A stretch of 64,000 nucleotides of DNA, from contig NC_068991.1 in NCBI RefSeq assembly GCF_001194135.2, positions 73,440,124-73,504,123 on the forward strand, in the 5' to 3' direction. The translations under genes were made by a program, and so were the position numbers. Positions 14,461 to 52,397 of this stretch are shown in pieces. A model generated the notes under the pieces. That model searched no databases and was not told the origin of the DNA. It was given only the letters and a program-made list of their open reading frames with translations. Each line of letters opens with the position of its first letter. Position 1 is the first letter of the stretch. Source of the stretch: Octopus bimaculoides. Taxonomy: Eukaryota.

Positions 14461-14541
<81 letters not shown>
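14440..14541. repeat. (AAT)n microsatellite
   Basis: Seen directly. Confidence 0.95.
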
Positions 14542-14545
<4 letters not shown>

Positions 14546-18226: not shown

Positions 18227-18318
18227 GTGTAGGAATGACTGTGTGGTAAGTACCTTGGTTACCAGCCACAAGTTTTCGGGTTGAGTACCACTCCGTGGCA
18301 TCTTGGGCAACTGTCTTC
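18226..18318 (+). mobile_element. S1 SINE head only
   Basis: GGTGTAGGAATGACTGTGTGGTAAG...CCACTCCGTGGCATCTTGGGCAACTGTCTTC. Confidence 0.8.
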
Positions 18319-18833
18319 AGCTGATACATTGAGTATTGAGGCGATGGTGCACAAGCAACTGTTACGTTGGACTGGAGACCTTATTAGAATGAAGGATAGC
18401 AGGATTCCTAACCAGATGCTATATGGAGAACTTGTGAATGGAAGAAGACCCCGGCAAAAACCAAGGCTGCGATTTAAGGACTGTGTCAAGTCCTCATTAA
18501 AGGCCTGTGATATGCAGGACACTGACTGGGAGAACAATGCCTGCCATCACCACAGATGGAGGAAGCAGGTTAATGAAGGGGTCGACACTTTTGAGAGAAC
18601 ACGTATCCAGCATGAAGAACTTAAGCGAGCTGCGCCAAAGCGCACGGCTCGTATAGTGAATGGGGAAAGCTTGGTCTGCAATGTTTGCAGTCGTGTATGC
18701 TTGTCAAGAGCAGGGCTCATTAGCCACCAACGGAGCCGCAAATGCAAAATATAAGTTAGTCCTAGAGCGCACTATGTTCCTGAAGGTCGGCAATGGTCTT
18801 CCTCGGTCACGAGTGGACGGCCATCATCATCAT
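18319..18833 (+). mobile_element. RTE-clade LINE 3' fragment (ORF C-terminus, zinc knuckle, 3' UTR, (CAT)n tail)
   Basis: SIEAMVHKQLLRWTGDLIRMKDSRIPNQMLYGEL..R..KPRLRFKD..WE..A...W...G...FE..R...CNVCSRVCLSRAGLISHQR*, typical of the RTE/BovB C-terminus, with an uninterrupted frame. Confidence 0.92.
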
Positions 18834-41703: not shown

Positions 41704-41759
<56 letters not shown>

Positions 41760-41817
41760 TAATAATAATAATTATTATAATAATAATAGTAATAATAATA
41801 GTAATAACAACAACGAC

Positions 41818-41849
<32 letters not shown>

Positions 41850-41881
41850 TAATAATAATAATAATAATTATAATAATAATG

Positions 41882-41914
<33 letters not shown>

Positions 41915-41962
41915 GTAATAATAATAGTAATAATAACAACAATAATAATAATAATAATAATA

Positions 41963-41999
<37 letters not shown>

Positions 42000-42131
42000 C
42001 AATGATAATAATGATAATTATAATAATAATAATAATAATAATAGTAATAGTAATAATAATAATAATAATAATAACGATAATAATAATAATAATAGTAATA
42101 ATAATAATAATAGTAATAATAATAATAACAA

Positions 42132-47772: not shown

Positions 47773-49453
47773 GTGCAAAGTGTTTAATTTTAATATCGTA
47801 AAACATAGGTGACATTGGAAAATTGGAAATATATCATTGTAAATACATTATACTTTAATATATAAAGTAATGCTAAGTATTGTTAGCTTTTGTAATAACC
47901 ATATTGGTTTTAATGTATTCTGACTGAAGACAGAATATATATGTATTTCAGTTTAAGCGCAATATTGACAAAAGGGGGTGGGTGTGATATATATTTCTAT
48001 GTATTAGAAAACAGAGAATAAAATTTATAAACAATAATATTTATAAATATATGTAAAAGTACGTTAGATGGTTATAAAATTATAAAATCATAATTGAAAC
48101 TTAAGTTATCTAAATATCTGAAATGATGATAAGATAATATCTATGTTTATAAGAATTATTGAATATAATCCAATTTTATGAGGATAGGTTAAGTTAAGTG
48201 TGAGTACGAATATCTAAACATATATATGATATTTGCTTTATTAGATAGAGTCTAAATGTGTCACAACTAATGATTAATTTTGATAACATGATATCTTTGA
48301 ACTACTTCAACATATATACTAGTTTAAACAAAGGGATGGTTTGCTATGGAGAGGATATTAATAACTTAGTTATTAATAGTTTATAGTCATTAGTTTCAAA
48401 TTTCTACTCGTCTAGTAAACGCTTTCGTCTGATCTTGATATTGTGATTGAAACTGAAATATCGGCATCATGGACGATGCACTTAATAACACAGAAAGCTG
48501 TTAAGTTTTAAGTTTATTTCTCGAATTGTCAAAATATTCGCCACCATTGTGACTTGGTTGCTGACACAAACTCAAACTAGTAGAAATGTCGACACCTTGC
48601 GAAATAATTTAAAATTTAGAGTAAATGAAACATGTTTAATAGTTGTAATCCTATAGTCATTTACAATAATTTGTGGACTGGTTACGTAATGATTGCTTAA
48701 CTAAAGTTAACACTAAATCTAACATAACTTTCCATGTTTACATGGATATTTTGGTGTAAAATTAGGTGTACGTTAAGGGTAGAATTTTGCAGAGGCAACA
48801 GTGTGAGACTTGTGTAAGTATTATTAATATTAAAGGGGTTGTATTATTATTATTAGTTCTATAACAGGAAGGAGTAAATATACAAATGTAAACCTGTGAA
48901 GTAATTCAGTACAATCTTGTAATGGGAAAATGTATAATGGGATCTGCAGTGGCAGAGATGTAAAATTATTTAGCGCGAAGGTTCACCTTAATGGAGTGAA
49001 ATATCATTAAACCGCCTCGGTACACACATATGTACAGTAATACATACATAGATACATACATGCCTACATATGCGTGTATATTTGTATGTGTGTTTGGTAT
49101 GTATGCGTTAGAGAATGTAAGAATTACATTATGTAGCTAAAAAGGCGACAGATCTGATTCTGAGAAAAAGATGGAAAAATCATCGTGTCTTGACAAAGGA
49201 GATAGGTATACCCTTAAATGTCATATGTGTTATATCATGTGTAGATCATATTTTTGAATTGTTGAGAATTTTTACATGTTTTAAATAAGCAAGACGTCAT
49301 CAATTTAGGGTATGGTTAAGAAGAAATATTTTGTACAAGAGTATTCCATAATTCCGTATTTTATAGTTGAGTTCTTTCTTTCAGGTTGTATTTAACGATA
49401 TTATTTACATTATTTACATTTGACGGATATTTGCCCTCATCTTGTTTGTTGTT

Positions 49454-49499
49454 AACACAACCTTTCGGCAGATGTACCCTCCAGCCTTCATCAGGTGTC
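49454..49499 (-). ncRNA. Minimal type I hammerhead (H1), mutated (GAAAG instead of GAAAC; stem II mismatch)
   Basis: GACAC-CUGAUGA-A-GGCUG gaggguacau CUGCC-GAA-AG GU U-GUGUU. Confidence 0.7.
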
Positions 49500-49547
49500 T
49501 TGGGGGAAATTTAGAACCTGGGTTCTCATTCCTAAGGTATTTTTCGA

Positions 49548-49601
<54 letters not shown>

Positions 49602-49631
49602 TATTATTATTATTATTATTACTATTATTAC

Positions 49632-49702
<71 letters not shown>

Positions 49703-49703
<1 letters not shown>

Positions 49704-50107
49704 AAAAGATATGCGGCCCATATGACATCAGGAGAGTATTCAAGAGTAATACAACGCTTCGCAAATATCTTCTTCGGGTAAAACCACCAATAGAAGAGAA
49801 TATGACCAAAAACTGCGTGTACTCCATCCCATGCAGCTATGGTAGGTTATACAAAAGTGAAGCATGACGCCCCCTCAAAATAAGGGTAGAGGAACATTGC
49901 AAAGGTGTGACACGAGGAGATATTGGTAAATCGGGTATAGCTGATCATGTATGGAACAATGGAGACTACCTCCTCCTGTGGGATGAAGTTAAAATAATAG
50001 ACAGAGGACACCATTGGAAAATACGAAAACTAAAAGAAGCAGCACATAAGTTAGGACGCAACAACCTCCTAAACAGACCGAGTTCAGATATGAATAGCAT
50101 ATGGTAA
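49703..50107 (+). pseudogene. Penelope-type GIY-YIG endonuclease C-terminal fragment, one internal stop (49865-49867)
   Basis: KICGPYDIRRVFKSNTTLRKYLLRVKPPIEENMTKNCVYSIPCSYGRLYKSEA*RPLKIRVEEHCKG...KSGIADHVW...WDEVKIID...WKIRKLKEA...NLLNR matches the VY.IPC.CG..Y.GET.R....R..EH..S.+A.H pattern of PLE endonucleases. Confidence 0.92.
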
Positions 50108-50180
50108 CTGGTATTAAGGAAGGATAGAAAAAAAATATTAGATTTATAAGCCCTAAAATTCACTCCATAATTGCCCACGG

Positions 50181-50245
50181 GTATATGGCGTACTGGTTAA
50201 GAGCGTGGGCTACTAACTCCAAGATTCCGAGCTCAATTCCACGCA
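50181..50245 (+). promoter_or_regulatory. tRNA-derived Pol III internal promoter (A and B boxes), not a functional tRNA
   Basis: A-box-like TGGCGTACTGGTTAAG, anticodon-arm-like TGGGCTACTAACTCCA, B-box-like GAGCTCAATTCC. Confidence 0.75.
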
Positions 50246-50306
50246 TAATAATAATAGCATCGAAAAATACCTTAGGAATGAGACCCCAGGTTCGAAATTT
50301 CCCCAA

Positions 50307-50352
50307 GATACCTGATGAAAGCTGGAGGGTATATCAGCCGAAACATTGTGGT
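50307..50352 (+). ncRNA. Minimal type I hammerhead (H1), mutated (ACAU instead of ACGU)
   Basis: GAUAC-CUGAUGA-A-AGCUG gaggguauau CAGCC-GAA-AC AU U-GUGGU. Confidence 0.7.
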
Positions 50353-50959
50353 AACAACAAAGAAGATGAGGACAAATATCCGTCAAATGTAAATAATGTA
50401 CATAATTCCTCATCTCTTAAATTTAGTACTGTATTTAACGATTCTCATTTTTTTTATGTATGACAGATATATTGTTAGTTTCTAAACCATATTTGTATGT
50501 CTTATCTTGAAACTTATGAGCTGTTATTTGGATAAGTGGAGTTAAAAATGACATCTGGTGTTAAGAGTCTTCAAATTTAATTAGTATCAGGTAGAAATAA
50601 CTAAATATTGCAAGAAAAAATTGCATAATAGAATATGATATTTTATGATGTGTATTATACGAAGTAAACTGTTTGTTCAATAGATTAAGTACATTTTTGA
50701 AATTTGTCTGGCTACAGTTTAGTTATAATGGAAGAATATAAAACGATATTATATTTCTTCTGCTCCTAATTTTTCTATGTAAAATAGTTTCTAGAAATCG
50801 TGTTTTCTATTAAAATTCATTGACAATGTTGCTATCATTCTAATAAATATGTTGTCATTAGAGATTTAACAGATTCTATCTCCATAATAAATCACCGAAT
50901 TTCATGTATATTTTGTTTATTTACAGTCACAATAATACTATCGTTACATTTTTATATCT

Positions 50960-51170: not shown

Positions 51171-51210
51171 ACACACACATACATATGTATATATGTATAT
51201 ATATTTATAT

Positions 51211-51343
51211 GAGTGACTGCGTGATAAGAAGCTTGCTTTCCCACCACGTGGTCCCGTGTTCAGTCCCACTGCCTGAGACCTTGGGCAAGTGTCTTCTGCC
51301 TTGTGAGTGGATTTCGTACACGGAAACTAAAAGAAGCCCGTCC
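51211..51343 (+). mobile_element. S1 SINE head
   Basis: AAGAAGCTTGCTTTCCCACCACGTGGTCCCGTGTTCAGTCCCACTGC...CCTTGGGCAAGTGTCTTC...GGAAACTAAAAGAAGCCCGTC. Confidence 0.9.
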
Positions 51344-52397
51344 TAAATATGTATGTATATATNNNNNNNNNNNNNNNNNNNNNNNNNNNNNNNNNNNNNN
51401 NNNNNNNNNNNNNNNNNNNNNNNNNNNNNNNNNNNNNNNNNNNNNNNNNNNNNNNNNNNNNNNNNNNNNNNNNNNNNNNNNNNNNNNNNNNNNNNNNNNN
51501 NNNNNNNNNNNNNNNNNNNNNNNNNNNNNNNNNNNNNNNNNNNNNNNNNNNNNNNNNNNNNNNNNNNNNNNNNNNNNNNNNNNNNNNNNNNNNNNNNNNN
51601 NNNNNNNNNNNNNNNNNNNNNNNNNNNNNNNNNNNNNNNNNNNNNNNNNNNNNNNNNNNNNNNNNNNNNNNNNNNNNNNNNNNNNNNNNNNNNNNNNNNN
51701 NNNNNNNNNNNNNNNNNNNNNNNNNNNNNNNNNNNNNNNNNNNNNNNNNNNNNNNNNNNNNNNNNNNNNNNNNNNNNNNNNNNNNNNNNNNNNNNNNNNN
51801 NNNNNNNNNNNNNNNNNNNNNNNNNNNNNNNNNNNNNNNNNNNNNNNNNNNNNNNNNNNNNNNNNNNNNNNNNNNNNNNNNNNNNNNNNNNNNNNNNNNN
51901 NNNNNNNNNNNNNNNNNNNNNNNNNNNNNNNNNNNNNNNNNNNNNNNNNNNNNNNNNNNNNNNNNNNNNNNNNNNNNNNNNNNNNNNNNNNNNNNNNNNN
52001 NNNNNNNNNNNNNNNNNNNNNNNNNNNNNNNNNNNNNNNNNNNNNNNNNNNNNNNNNNNNNNNNNNNNNNNNNNNNNNNNNNNNNNNNNNNNNNNNNNNN
52101 NNNNNNNNNNNNNNNNNNNNNNNNNNNNNNNNNNNNNNNNNNNNNNNNNNNNNNNNNNNNNNNNNNNNNNNNNNNNNNNNNNNNNNNNNNNNNNNNNNNN
52201 NNNNNNNNNNNNNNNNNNNNNNNNNNNNNNNNNNNNNNNNNNNNNNNNNNNNNNNNNNNNNNNNNNNNNNNNNNNNNNNNNNNNNNNNNNNATGTATATT
52301 AAATAGTATATTTTTTCTCCTTACGTTGACACAATTATTTTAGTAAGTAATCAGTTTTATAATACGTGTATATAGTTATCTACCTATGTCTGGTAGA

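What the first reader, a model, noticed from the sequence alone, without database searches (positions are those of the whole stretch)
49387..50442. Single-insertion Penelope cassette: inverted hammerhead repeat, GIY-YIG, tRNA head, direct hammerhead repeat, bounded by a 13-bp direct repeat
Seen: TGTATTTAACGAT flanks both ends. 49401-49550 is an inverted copy of 50258-50407, and each carries a minimal hammerhead. A GIY-YIG frame with one internal stop lies between them. Known: Penelope-like elements carry GIY-YIG endonucleases, tandem or inverted pseudo-LTRs and minimal type I hammerheads. Inference: the 1.03-kb block inserted as one event with a long target duplication, and the inversion breakpoint falls inside the element's own (AAT)n tract. 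It looks like a well-preserved snapshot of the integration mechanism.
Basis: partly seen in the sequence, partly recalled or inferred. Interest (0 to 1): 0.85.

Follow-up and report, generated by a model that had tools for sequence, protein, structure and literature searches.

The report
Decayed Penelope retrotransposon insertion, inverted arms
This 1.06-kb block is an old, broken copy of a Penelope-like retrotransposon that landed in one complex event, leaving two inverted end-pieces and a 13-bp target duplication, which is the textbook insertion pattern of this element class and so is ordinary rather than new.

Summary
The 13-mer TGTATTTAACGAT occurs only twice in the window, at the two ends of the block. 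The arms 49400-49550 and 50258-50407 are inverted copies (~91%). Between them lies the C-terminal 134 codons of a Penelope-like element (PLE) ORF with one in-frame stop. Full-length relatives (~830 aa) carry an RT domain followed by this GIY-YIG-type domain.

The family consensus of the arms matches the published "min-HHR" of metazoan PLEs, but both window copies carry disabling mutations and Rfam finds nothing. ARAGORN and Rfam do not confirm the "tRNA head". That stretch is a conserved part of this lineage's 3' UTR.

The 22 nt between the right arm and the 13-mer are the PLE "tail", conserved family sequence. The 13-mer itself is not family sequence, apart from possibly its first two bases.

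The layout is already described for PLEs: a 5'-truncated copy, an adjacent inverted 5'-truncated copy, a tail at one end and a TSD around the whole. Published biochemistry explains it: both strands cleaved and extended, with two RT start sites.

No empty site could be tested. Interest 0.22.

The parts
49387..49399 (.). Left copy of the 13-bp target-site duplication TGTATTTAACGAT
   Evidence: Exact direct repeat D9. The only two occurrences in the window. Empirical chance about 0.002. It directly abuts the recurrent tail-less terminus of the inverted arm.
49400..49550 (-). Inverted arm: a 5'-truncated copy of the element's 3'-terminal 'H body' (pLTR-like). Its outer end at 49400 is the tail-less family terminus ...GTAAATAAT.
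   Evidence: 91% identical to 50258-50407 in reverse complement. The same terminus occurs in the solo copy at 29959 and in L002a. 5 private substitutions in 150 nt.
49452..49501 (-). Decayed minimal type-I hammerhead motif of the inverted arm
   Evidence: CUGAUGA, unpaired A, helix II, GAAA and helix I GUGUU/GACAC are present. Helix II has a U/U mismatch and 15.2-16.2 reads GG, which is not palindromic. No Rfam hit.
49550..49702 (-). (TTA)51 on the + strand, which is (AAT)n in element sense. It is the element's internal A/T-rich spacer, expanded, and it forms the inner end of the inverted arm and the inversion junction.
   Evidence: TRF: period 3, 51 copies, 96% matches. The same spacer position lies upstream of the H body in all copies. 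The junction with the direct copy at ~49701-49703 shares 2 nt (TA) with the upstream sequence seen in L003.
49703..50107 (+). 5'-truncated ORF remnant: the RT-EN linker plus the GIY-YIG-type endonuclease domain (134 codons), with an in-frame TGA at 49865-49867 and a terminal TAA at 50105-50107. It is inactive: the second core Cys is now Tyr and GET is now SEA.
   Evidence: Translation. 115 homologues, best E = 1.5e-54. Motif alignment. Full-length relatives of 742-841 aa have RVT_1 in 10 of 10 and sub-threshold PF01541 in 2 of 10 at the homologous position. hhalign against I-TevI E = 7.7e-4. T4 EndoII 2wsh E = 0.0034.
50108..50244 (+).
   Evidence: Colinear and conserved in O. vulgaris L002a (85%), in L003 (86%) and in the distant L001/L005 family. 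No tool calls it a tRNA.
50245..50257 (+). (AAT)4, the unexpanded internal spacer of the direct copy
   Evidence: The homologous A/T-rich spacer is present in L002a and L003.
50258..50407 (+). Direct arm: the 3'-terminal H body of the 5'-truncated main copy
   Evidence: 6 private substitutions in 150 nt.
50305..50354 (+). Decayed minimal type-I hammerhead motif of the direct arm
   Evidence: Core boxes are present. There is an A/C mismatch at 10.1-11.1, 15.2-16.2 reads CA, and helix I is weakened. No Rfam hit.
50408..50429 (+). PLE 'tail': a 22-nt extension present at only one end of the composite. It may extend 2 nt further, ...GTACTG, overlapping the first 2 nt of the 13-mer.
   Evidence: Conserved after the H body in L002b, L002c and, at its end, L001. 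Absent from the inverted arm, the solo copy, L002a and L005. It matches the published tail concept (PMC3846280, PMC8557442, PMC11167929).
50430..50442 (.). Right copy of the 13-bp target-site duplication
29814..29959 (+). Related solo H copy elsewhere in the window (tail-less, preceded by (CTA)n(AAT)n), used as an outgroup
   Evidence: 92% identical to both arms. Its HHR motif at 29860-29909 is also decayed.

Best explanation
The block 49387-50442 is one old, dead insertion of an endonuclease-encoding Penelope-like retrotransposon (PLE) of an octopus-type genome.

Steps 1-5 are inferred from the anatomy and from published PLE biochemistry.
1. The element's RT-EN protein made staggered cuts 13 bp apart on the two strands of the AT-rich target TGTATTTAACGAT.
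2. The bottom-strand 3'-OH primed reverse transcription at the distal of the element's two internal start sites. The cDNA therefore carries the 22-nt tail and then runs through the H body with its hammerhead, (AAT)n, the 3' UTR and the EN-coding region. It stops early in the RT-EN linker at codons Q-K-I-C.
3. The top-strand 3'-OH primed a second cDNA at the proximal start site, so this one has no tail. It ran through the H body into the (AAU)n spacer.
4. The two cDNA ends were joined head-to-head at a 2-nt microhomology (TA), leaving an expanded (TTA)51 tract at the junction.
5. Gap fill-in duplicated the 13-bp target.

Shown: since insertion, each arm has accumulated about 3.7% substitutions, both hammerheads have lost pairing or palindrome features, and the EN frame has a stop and lost motif residues. 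The copy has no function now.
For: PLE identity:
- The ORF remnant has 115 homologues, best E = 1.5e-54.
- Longer and full-length relatives have RVT_1 followed by this domain.
- The diverse consensus reads VY-IPC-CG--YIGET-R--R--EH, with Y, Y/G, R and E invariant or nearly so.
- hhalign against I-TevI aligns the GIY, YIG, R, H and E positions at E = 7.7e-4.
- The PDB profile search hits T4 EndoII in the EN region and telomerase RT in the RT region.

Hammerhead:
- The family consensus has the published min-HHR signatures: a nucleotide between 9 and 10.1, a G10.1-C11.1 pair, palindromic 15.2-16.2 and a short helix I (PMC4209133).
- A strict descriptor gave 0 hits in 200 shuffles of the window and 1 hit, on copy L002b.

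Architecture:
- Two discrete family termini lie 22-24 nt apart. The tail-less one ends Hleft, copy3 and L002a; in the L001 family the homologous tail-less terminus ends L005 and the L001 inverted arm. The tail-bearing one ends Hright, L002b, L002c and the L001 direct copy.
- Three of three GIY-containing loci whose 5' junction is visible (window, L002, L001) have an inverted 5'-truncated arm next to the direct copy.
- The arrangement is head-to-head, the commonest PLE form (PMC3846280).

TSD:
- The exact 13-mer is unique to the two boundaries, with P about 0.002.
- It is not conserved after the tail in other copies.
- Neither sub-element has a TSD of its own.

Age: the arms are equally diverged, with 5 and 6 private changes.

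Literature:
- The same composite, with an 8-10-bp TSD and a 31-bp tail, is described in rotifer PLEs (PMC3846280).
- The general scheme is given in PMC8557442.
- A purified PLE protein cleaves and extends both strands at AT-rich sites and starts RT at two adjacent internal sites, with the tail lying between them (PMC11167929).
Against: - No empty site could be examined, so 'one event' rests on the TSD and on analogy.
- The arms share no derived variants. The phylogeny is star-like, so sequence relatedness neither supports nor refutes co-synthesis from one RNA.
- Formal GIY-YIG tests are weak. Pfam is below threshold or silent, the AF2 model is poor at pLDDT 59 and Foldseek is empty.
- Covariation in the hammerhead is not significant with 7 sequences, and Rfam finds nothing.
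- The bottom-strand nick site does not show the ATT motif reported for the anole PLE.
- The 51-unit length of the junction tract is unexplained; slippage or later expansion are both possible.
Confidence: 0.78

Rival explanations
1. Two independent insertions. A solo '(AAT)n + H body' element landed in inverted orientation right beside, or at the 5' edge of, an older 5'-truncated PLE copy. The 13-mer would then be the TSD of only one of them, or chance.
For: Solo '(AAT)n + H' copies exist (window 29814-29959; L002 5795-6061). The arms share no derived variants. (AAT)n arrays are common in this window, and PLEs favour microsatellites (PMC8557442).
Against: The 13-mer brackets the composite exactly, abutting the two recognised family termini. 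Neither sub-element has its own flanking repeat: TGTATTTAACGAT against CAAAAGATATGCG for the left part, and (TTA)n against the 13-mer for the right part. The arms are equally old. The same composite recurs in L002 and L001 and is the documented PLE norm (PMC3846280).
Confidence: 0.1
2. Region ~50166-50429 is a separate tRNA-derived SINE or retrozyme-like non-autonomous element (Pol III head + hammerhead + PLE-type tail) that inserted downstream of an unrelated PLE ORF fragment.
For: There is an A-box-like 11-mer, with 1 mismatch here and a perfect match in L002a and L003, plus a D-arm-like GGTTAAGAGCG (no segment passed the combined A/B-box scan). SINEs make up ~12% of octopus genomes (PMC13282606). 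HHR-bearing non-autonomous PLE derivatives are known (bioRxiv 10.64898/2026.07.22.740005). A second copy of the head lies apart from any ORF in L002 6061-6115.
Against: The ORF end, 3' UTR, head-like segment, spacer and H body are colinear, with the same junctions, in the window, L002a, L003 and the distant L001/L005 family, which is ~71% identical in nucleotides. The segment is therefore part of the autonomous lineage's 3' UTR. It starts ~60 nt after the stop codon with no TSD of its own. No tRNA is called by any tool.
Confidence: 0.04
3. A post-insertion rearrangement, such as fold-back replication or recombination, duplicated and inverted the H arm of a simple 5'-truncated PLE copy.
For: Inverted duplications do arise by replication errors near microsatellites, and the junction lies in a long (TTA)n tract.
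Against: The outer end of the inverted arm coincides to the base with a recurrent family terminus and directly abuts the left 13-mer. A later duplication would not be expected to end there or to stay inside the TSD. The arm lacks the tail that the supposed source arm carries.
Confidence: 0.05
4. Assembly artefact: the inverted arm was created by mis-joining of repeat-containing reads in a gap-rich draft assembly.
For: The window has 22 N gaps. PLE tandem and inverted structures are known to trouble short-read assemblies (PMC8557442, PMC3846280).
Against: There is no N within 49387-50442. The arms differ at ~9% of positions, so they are not a collapsed or mirrored copy. Analogous structures occur in a chromosome-level O. 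vulgaris assembly (L002).
Confidence: 0.03

Closest known systems
Canonical EN+ Penelope-like element insertions with an inverted pLTR, an optional tail and a TSD (for example Pen2a_Av and Pen2 derivatives of Adineta vaga, PMC3846280; general scheme in PMC8557442, Fig. 2)
   Same: There is a single ORF ending in a GIY-YIG-type EN, here with an in-frame stop. An adjacent inverted 5'-truncated copy forms head-to-head inverted repeats. A short extension (tail) is present at only one end. A short TSD surrounds the whole composite. The copy is 5'-truncated and the pLTR-like region carries a hammerhead motif.
   Different: The TSD is 13 bp, against 8-10 bp in the rotifer examples. The tail is 22-24 nt, against 30-40. 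The main copy is so truncated that only the EN domain and 3' UTR remain, so there is no upstream direct pLTR. The inversion junction is a long (TTA)51 tract, not a palindrome. The host is a cephalopod.
Minimal type-I hammerhead ribozymes (min-HHR) of metazoan PLEs (Cervera & De la Pena 2014, PMC4209133)
   Same: The family consensus has CUGAUGA, an unpaired nucleotide between 9 and 10.1, a G10.1-C11.1 pair, a 5-6-bp helix II, GAAA, palindromic C15.2/G16.2 with no real helix III (implying action as a dimer) and a 5-bp helix I. It lies in the terminal repeat. Paired motifs on opposite strands a few hundred bp apart are described in that paper.
   Different: Both copies in this cassette are mutated in helix II and at 15.2-16.2. 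No cleavage activity has been tested. Rfam models do not detect it.
Dual-strand cleavage and two-site internal initiation of reverse transcription by the Anolis Poseidon PLE (Frangieh et al. 2024, PMC11167929), and by analogy L1 'twin priming' inversions (own knowledge: Ostertag & Kazazian 2001)
   Same: The two cDNA-derived arms have their RT-start ends facing outward against the TSD. One arm starts at the tail-bearing site and the other at the tail-less site. The target is AT-rich and the internal junction shows microhomology.
   Different: Nothing was measured here; the mechanism is inferred from the end product. The ATT cleavage motif is seen on only one strand of this target.
HHR-bearing non-autonomous derivatives: the Sm-alpha SINE of Schistosoma (own knowledge, cited in PMC4209133) and animal non-LTR retrozymes (bioRxiv 10.64898/2026.07.22.740005)
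   Same: An A-box-like segment lies upstream of a hammerhead-bearing PLE terminus. Solo H copies are scattered in the genome.
   Different: Here the segment is physically part of the 3' UTR of the autonomous element and is not a recognisable tRNA. There are no tandem arrays, and no Pol III transcript has been shown.

Membership tests
Penelope-like elements (canonical, C-terminal EN+) | Single ORF with a reverse transcriptase domain upstream of the endonuclease | tested here: met
   The window copy is truncated and has no RT. Its homologues extend upstream into RVT_1. 10 of 10 full-length relatives (742-841 aa) have a central RVT_1 hit. The consensus shows AMGSPLSP and RYVDD motifs. The profile also hits telomerase RT 3du5 at E = 1.2e-5, among group II and retron RTs.
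Penelope-like elements (canonical, C-terminal EN+) | C-terminal GIY-YIG endonuclease with CCHH residues, two of the Cys lying inside the GIY-YIG core | tested here: met
   At motif level the match is clear: VY-IPC-CG--YIGET-R--R--EH...AEH, with Y55, C59, C61, Y65, G67, R71, R76, E79, H80, H97 and E128 invariant or nearly so. Formal homology is modest. hhalign against I-TevI gives E = 7.7e-4, probability 25%. T4 EndoII 2wsh scores E = 0.0034. PF01541 is sub-threshold in 2 of 10 relatives. JGI names P0038 a GIY-YIG endonuclease. Pfam on the fragment, a shallow PDB profile and AF2 with Foldseek were uninformative. The window copy itself has lost C61 (now Y) and GET (now SEA).
Penelope-like elements (canonical, C-terminal EN+) | Terminal repeats (pLTRs) in direct or inverted orientation, formed by partial tandem or inverted 5'-truncated copies | tested here: met
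   There are inverted 150-nt arms. Analogous inverted arms occur in L002 and L001. No direct upstream pLTR is present because the main copy is 5'-truncated.
Penelope-like elements (canonical, C-terminal EN+) | Optional short 'tail' extension at one end only | tested here: met
   50408-50429 is present on the right arm only. The sequence is conserved in L002b and L002c and, at its end, in L001. It is absent from five other termini.
Penelope-like elements (canonical, C-terminal EN+) | Short target-site duplication around the whole insert | tested here: met
   A 13-bp exact repeat with P about 0.002, not part of the family terminus. The empty site was not available.
Penelope-like elements (canonical, C-terminal EN+) | Hammerhead ribozyme motif in the terminal repeat | tested here: met
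   Met at family-consensus level and in copy L002b. Both window copies are decayed.
Hammerhead ribozyme, type I (Rfam RF00163 and relatives) | Match to the curated covariance model | tested here: not met
   No hit at the gathering threshold on the window, nor at E <= 10 on the cassette or on the homologous segments of L002 and L001. This is expected for min-HHRs, which lack helix III.
Hammerhead ribozyme, type I (min-HHR variant of PLEs) | Conserved core (C3-A9, G12-A14), helices I and II, a nucleotide between 9 and 10.1, a G10.1-C11.1 pair and palindromic 15.2-16.2 | tested here: inconclusive
   All features are present in the consensus and in L002b, and there were 0 strict hits in 200 shuffles. 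In the two cassette copies the core boxes are intact but the pairing and palindrome features are broken. Covariation amounts to one compensatory pair and is not significant.
Hammerhead ribozyme | Self-cleavage activity | not testable with these tools
   This needs in vitro transcription of monomer and dimer constructs.
tRNA-derived SINE head | tRNA-like cloverleaf, or a match to a tRNA model | tested here: not met
   ARAGORN at default and relaxed settings, and the Rfam tRNA model, were negative on the window, L002a, L002d, L001 and L003.
tRNA-derived SINE head | Pol III A and B boxes at tRNA-like spacing | tested here: inconclusive
   The A box has 1 mismatch in the window and matches perfectly in L002a and L003. 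By eye, the best B-box-like stretch has 3 mismatches in the window and L002a and 2 in L001 and L003. No segment passes a combined scan allowing <= 2 mismatches in each box.
Twin-priming-type inversion (as for L1) | Inverted 3'-end segment plus a direct 5'-truncated segment, TSD around both, and microhomology at the internal junction | tested here: met
   Geometry. The 2-nt TA microhomology is inferred by comparison with L003. The process itself is inferred, not observed.

The most novel reading that the evidence does not exclude
The conserved 3'-UTR module of this cephalopod PLE lineage may be a functional unit in its own right. The module is an A-box-bearing tRNA-like stretch, then an A/T-rich or (AAT)n spacer, then the min-HHR body, then the tail. 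It could be an internal Pol III-type promoter, or an RT-recruiting RNA structure, that lets short 'head + H' or '(AAT)n + H' transcripts be copied by the PLE machinery. Under this reading, part of the very large 'unclassified SINE' fraction of octopus genomes would be PLE-mobilised, and the internal (AAT)n would be a preferred site for 5' junction formation: three of the five H copies seen here begin in it.
Probability: 0.1. Interest if true: 0.6.

Novelty: new member of a known kind. Interest (0 to 1): 0.22.

Why it matters
It matters little beyond annotation. It is a clean, base-resolved example, in a cephalopod, of the composite PLE insertion: inverted arm, direct arm, tail at one end, TSD. 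Its two arm termini lie 22-24 nt apart, as expected from the two RT start sites measured in vitro for an unrelated vertebrate PLE. That gives genomic corroboration that dual-strand priming and two-site initiation are general to PLEs.

It also shows that repeat annotators may label the H arms and the head-like 3'-UTR piece as SINEs or unknown repeats when they are in fact PLE termini. The conserved head-like 3'-UTR segment and the recurrent breakpoints in the internal (AAT)n are small leads worth a genome-wide look.

Tried and rejected
- Rfam at the gathering threshold on the whole window, and at E <= 10 on the cassette, L002, L001 and L003, gave no hammerhead and no tRNA, only chance-level hits.
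- ARAGORN at default and relaxed settings gave no credible tRNA. At ps70 it made calls, but 92 of 400 shuffled controls did too.
- An A/B-box scan found no segment passing <= 2 mismatches in each box.
- Pfam on the window fragment and on short homologues gave nothing. A PDB profile search with the shallow alignment A2 returned only noise. hhalign of the shallow profile A4 against I-TevI gave probability 0.4%. The AlphaFold2 model from A4 had pLDDT 59 and pTM 0.33, and Foldseek against PDB found nothing at E <= 0.001. These tests became informative only after a diverse profile, A6, was built.
- A shared-variant test for co-synthesis of the two arms gave a star phylogeny and was uninformative.
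- Counting covariation on 7 HHR sequences gave no significant result.
- The search for more family copies or the locus itself failed. Metagenome scans with the H 3' end and with the left flank plus the 13-mer each gave 0 hits. Widening the O. vulgaris locus to 20 kb added no copies. An exact-product look-up of an ORF spanning the right junction found nothing on record.
- The window has no recognisable host exon through which to reach an orthologue.
- I considered and rejected a foldback or TIR DNA transposon. The arms' outer ends differ (tail on one side only), the arms occur solo elsewhere, and the interior is a retroelement ORF.
- I considered and rejected reading the H body as a minus-strand SINE with an (ATT)n tail. 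The H body is colinear with the ORF 3' UTR on the plus strand in four loci.

Full report
**What is in the sequence**

The 13-mer TGTATTTAACGAT sits at 49387-49399 and 50430-50442 and nowhere else on either strand of the 64-kb window. For random pairs of 40-nt windows taken at the same spacing, a shared exact word of 13 nt or more occurs with frequency about 0.002, and those cases come mainly from microsatellites. The 13-mer is not low-complexity.

Between the two 13-mers lie, in order:
- an arm at 49400-49550 that is the reverse complement of 50258-50407 (91% over 150 nt)
- a (TTA)51 tract at 49550-49702
- a reading frame at 49703-50107 with one internal stop (TGA 49865-49867) and a terminal TAA
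- about 137 nt of further sequence
- (AAT)4
- the direct arm at 50258-50407
- 22 nt (50408-50429) before the right 13-mer

There are no N's inside the block.

**The coding remnant**

The translated frame finds 115 proteins, the best at E = 1.5e-54. One is an annotated Octopus vulgaris protein, and another is named by JGI as a predicted GIY-YIG superfamily endonuclease.

Longer relatives extend upstream into an RVT_1 domain. An exhaustive representative search returned full-length relatives of 742-841 aa, with the query region at their C-terminus. All ten that I scanned have a central RVT_1 hit, nine of them above Pfam's gathering score. Two have sub-threshold PF01541 (GIY-YIG) matches at exactly the homologous position.

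The diverse alignment shows RT motifs (AMGSPLSP, RYVDD). In the C-terminal domain it shows VY-IPC-CG--YIGET-R--R--EH...AEH, with the GIY Tyr, the YIG Tyr/Gly, two Arg, a Glu and the Cys/His residues invariant or nearly so. This is the CCHH-bearing GIY-YIG pattern described as characteristic of canonical EN+ PLEs (PMC8557442).

Formal homology to solved GIY-YIG enzymes is modest but lies at the right place:
- hhalign against the I-TevI catalytic domain aligns the GIY, YIG, Arg, His and Glu positions (E = 7.7e-4, probability 25%). The reference sequence was verified at 100% identity in T-even phage records.
- The PDB profile search hits T4 endonuclease II in the EN region (E = 0.0034). That this enzyme is a GIY-YIG nuclease is my own knowledge. 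The same search hits telomerase, group II and retron RTs in the RT region.

Shallower tests were uninformative.

The window copy itself is dead. It is truncated in the RT-EN linker, has the in-frame stop, and has lost the second core Cys (now Tyr) and the GET motif (now SEA).

**The arms and the hammerhead**

A third, solo copy of the arm lies at 29814-29959. An 8-kb O. vulgaris locus (L002, OX597819.1) holds three more.

All share a body that ends "...GTAAATAATGTAAATAAT" and is preceded by an (AAT)n or A/T-rich spacer.

Rfam finds no hammerhead at any threshold. By hand, the family consensus reads:

5'-GACAC CUGAUGA A GGCUG(G)...(U)CAGCC GAAA CG U U / GUGUU

[quoted passage not shown] These are the features Cervera & De la Pena list as diagnostic of the dimer-acting "min-HHR" of metazoan PLEs. 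They also note pairs of motifs on opposite strands 100-700 bp apart (PMC4209133).

A strict descriptor built from those features gave no hit in 200 shuffles of the window on both strands. In the real data it gave one hit, on copy L002b.

The three window copies all fail it. The right arm has an A/C mismatch at 10.1-11.1, CA at 15.2-16.2 and a weakened helix I. The left arm has a U/U mismatch in helix II and GG at 15.2-16.2.

A distant relative (L005) has GGCCG/CGGCC where the octopus copies have GGCUG/CAGCC. With seven sequences this single compensatory pair is not statistically meaningful, since shuffles reach it 217 times in 500.

So the family carries a PLE-type min-HHR, and the two copies in the cassette are decayed versions of it.

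**The "tRNA head"**

ARAGORN finds no tRNA in the window or in any homologous locus. With relaxed thresholds it gives calls only at a setting where 92 of 400 shuffled controls also give calls. The Rfam tRNA model is silent on four versions of the segment.

What remains is an A-box-like 11-mer. It has one mismatch here and matches perfectly in L002a and L003. It comes with poor B-box matches, and no segment passed the combined A/B-box scan (sequences).

The segment is nevertheless real and conserved. The order of ORF end, 3' UTR, head-like piece, A/T-rich spacer, HHR body and tail is colinear in four places:
- the window
- L002a (85% identity)
- a scaffold from a metagenome-labelled ENA assembly, L003 (86%)
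- the much more distant L001/L005 family from another ENA assembly (~71% nucleotide identity in the EN region)

The segment is therefore an integral part of this PLE lineage's 3' UTR, not a separate SINE that happened to land there.

**The tail and the 13-mer**

The 22 nt between the right arm and the right 13-mer (CATAATTCCTCATCTCTTAAATTTAGTAC) are conserved after the H body in L002b and L002c. Their end (TTTAGTACTG) is also conserved in L001. They are absent from the left arm, the solo copy, L002a and L005.

The family therefore has two discrete 3' termini 22-24 nt apart. This is the PLE "tail", an optional extension found at only one end of an insertion unit (PMC3846280, PMC8557442).

After the tail, the four available copies continue with unrelated sequence:
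- TGTATTTAACGAT (window)
- AGGATTATTATTA (L002b)
- TGCTTTAAAATTA (L002c)
- TGAGACAAGAAAC (L001)

They share at most the first two bases. The 13-mer is therefore target DNA, not the family terminus. This answers the finding's first refutation criterion, with a 2-nt ambiguity (TSD of 11-13 bp, or 2 nt of microhomology at the priming site).

**One event or two**

- Neither sub-element has a flanking repeat of its own.
- The two arms are equally diverged from the family consensus, with 5 and 6 private changes per 150 nt, about 3.7%.
- They share no derived variants, so the phylogeny is star-like and this test is neutral.
- The outer end of each arm coincides to the base with one of the two family termini and directly abuts a 13-mer.
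- The same composite recurs in L002 and L001. In L002 the tail is on the inverted arm and the junction lies inside the H body, with an 11-nt filler. In L001 the tail is on the direct arm and the junction has a T-run.

[quoted passage not shown] They note that head-to-head is the commonest arrangement (PMC3846280).

Frangieh et al. show that a purified PLE protein cleaves and extends both DNA strands at AT-rich sites. They also show that reverse transcription starts at two adjacent internal sites, and that the tail is the sequence between them (PMC11167929).

The cassette is what that mechanism predicts. One cDNA is primed from each strand, one from each start site, and they meet head-to-head. 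Here the internal junction lies at the end of the element's own (AAU)n spacer and shows a 2-nt TA microhomology, judged against the upstream sequence preserved in L003. The order of events is inferred, not observed.

**What could not be done**

No orthologous or allelic empty site could be reached:
- The window has no recognisable host exon.
- Scans of the metagenome collection for the H terminus and for the left flank plus the 13-mer found nothing.
- An exact-product look-up across the right junction found nothing.

The 51-unit length of the junction tract is unexplained. (AAT)n-type arrays are common in this window, at about nine places and 1.3% of non-N bases, so later expansion is plausible.

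**Verdict**

The "tRNA head" is not confirmed, the hammerheads and the ORF are decayed, and the tail was overlooked.

PLEs are a known and abundant TE order in octopus genomes (PMC13282606, PMC8967140), and this architecture and its mechanism are already in the literature. The finding is a new member of a known kind, of low interest (0.22).

The only mildly novel leads are the conserved head-like 3'-UTR segment and the recurrent breakpoints in the internal (AAT)n spacer.

Noticed in passing
window 29661-29959: A solo, tail-less copy of the H body (29814-29959, + strand, decayed HHR at 29860-29909). It is preceded by a compound (CTA)n(AAT)n array, and no ORF or head-like segment lies upstream.
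   Followed up: partly
window 51210-51345: A tRNA-related SINE-like stretch (...GTGTTCAGTCCCACTGC...) on the + strand, running into the N gap at 51363. It contains an 18-nt echo (51320-51337) of the EN-coding sequence at 50023-50040, probably by chance.
   Followed up: no
window 33670-33790: Another SINE-like piece with GGCTAAGAGCG and a B-box-like GAGTTCAAATCCCAC. It is unrelated in sequence to the cassette's head-like segment beyond these motifs.
   Followed up: no
window 18281-18754 and 37782-38126: ORF fragments with weak C2H2 zinc-finger matches (E = 0.003 and 0.04). They look like the C-terminal ends of LINE-type retrotransposon ORFs.
   Followed up: partly
window, whole: The draft assembly is very microsatellite-rich. 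It has 22 N gaps and perfect (AAT)n/(ATT)n runs of 6 units or more at about nine separate places (for example 14463-14543, 27703-27798, 34704-34778 and 41707-42072), covering 1.3% of non-N bases.
   Followed up: partly
L001 4130-4220 (ENA ERZ21867824 ctg123337l): The inverted arm of this distant relative joins the H 3' end directly to the first ~25 nt of the 3' UTR. It skips the ~345 nt that hold the head-like segment and the hammerhead. This could be an internal deletion, a template jump, or a variant lacking that module. A 20-nt T-run fills the junction with the direct copy.
   Followed up: partly
L002 4049-4059 (O. vulgaris OX597819.1): At the junction between the inverted and direct arms, an 11-nt filler (ACGGATATTTG) repeats H sequence from ~20 nt upstream. 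This looks like a template-switch signature. The flanks of this composite share only a doubtful ~7-nt repeat.
   Followed up: partly
L002 6061-6297: A second, shorter copy of the head-like segment (GCCCGTGGGCATAGCGGTTAAGAGCGCGGG...) lies between the (ATT)n of an inverted H copy and a long (AAT)n(AAC)n(AAT)n array. No H body follows it.
   Followed up: no
L005 3899-3948 (ENA ERZ21867824 ctg83674l): This is the best-preserved hammerhead of the distant family. Helix II reads GGCCG/CGGCC where the octopus copies have GGCUG/CAGCC, one compensatory pair. Helix I has only 3 bp. The copy ends at the tail-less terminus.
   Followed up: yes
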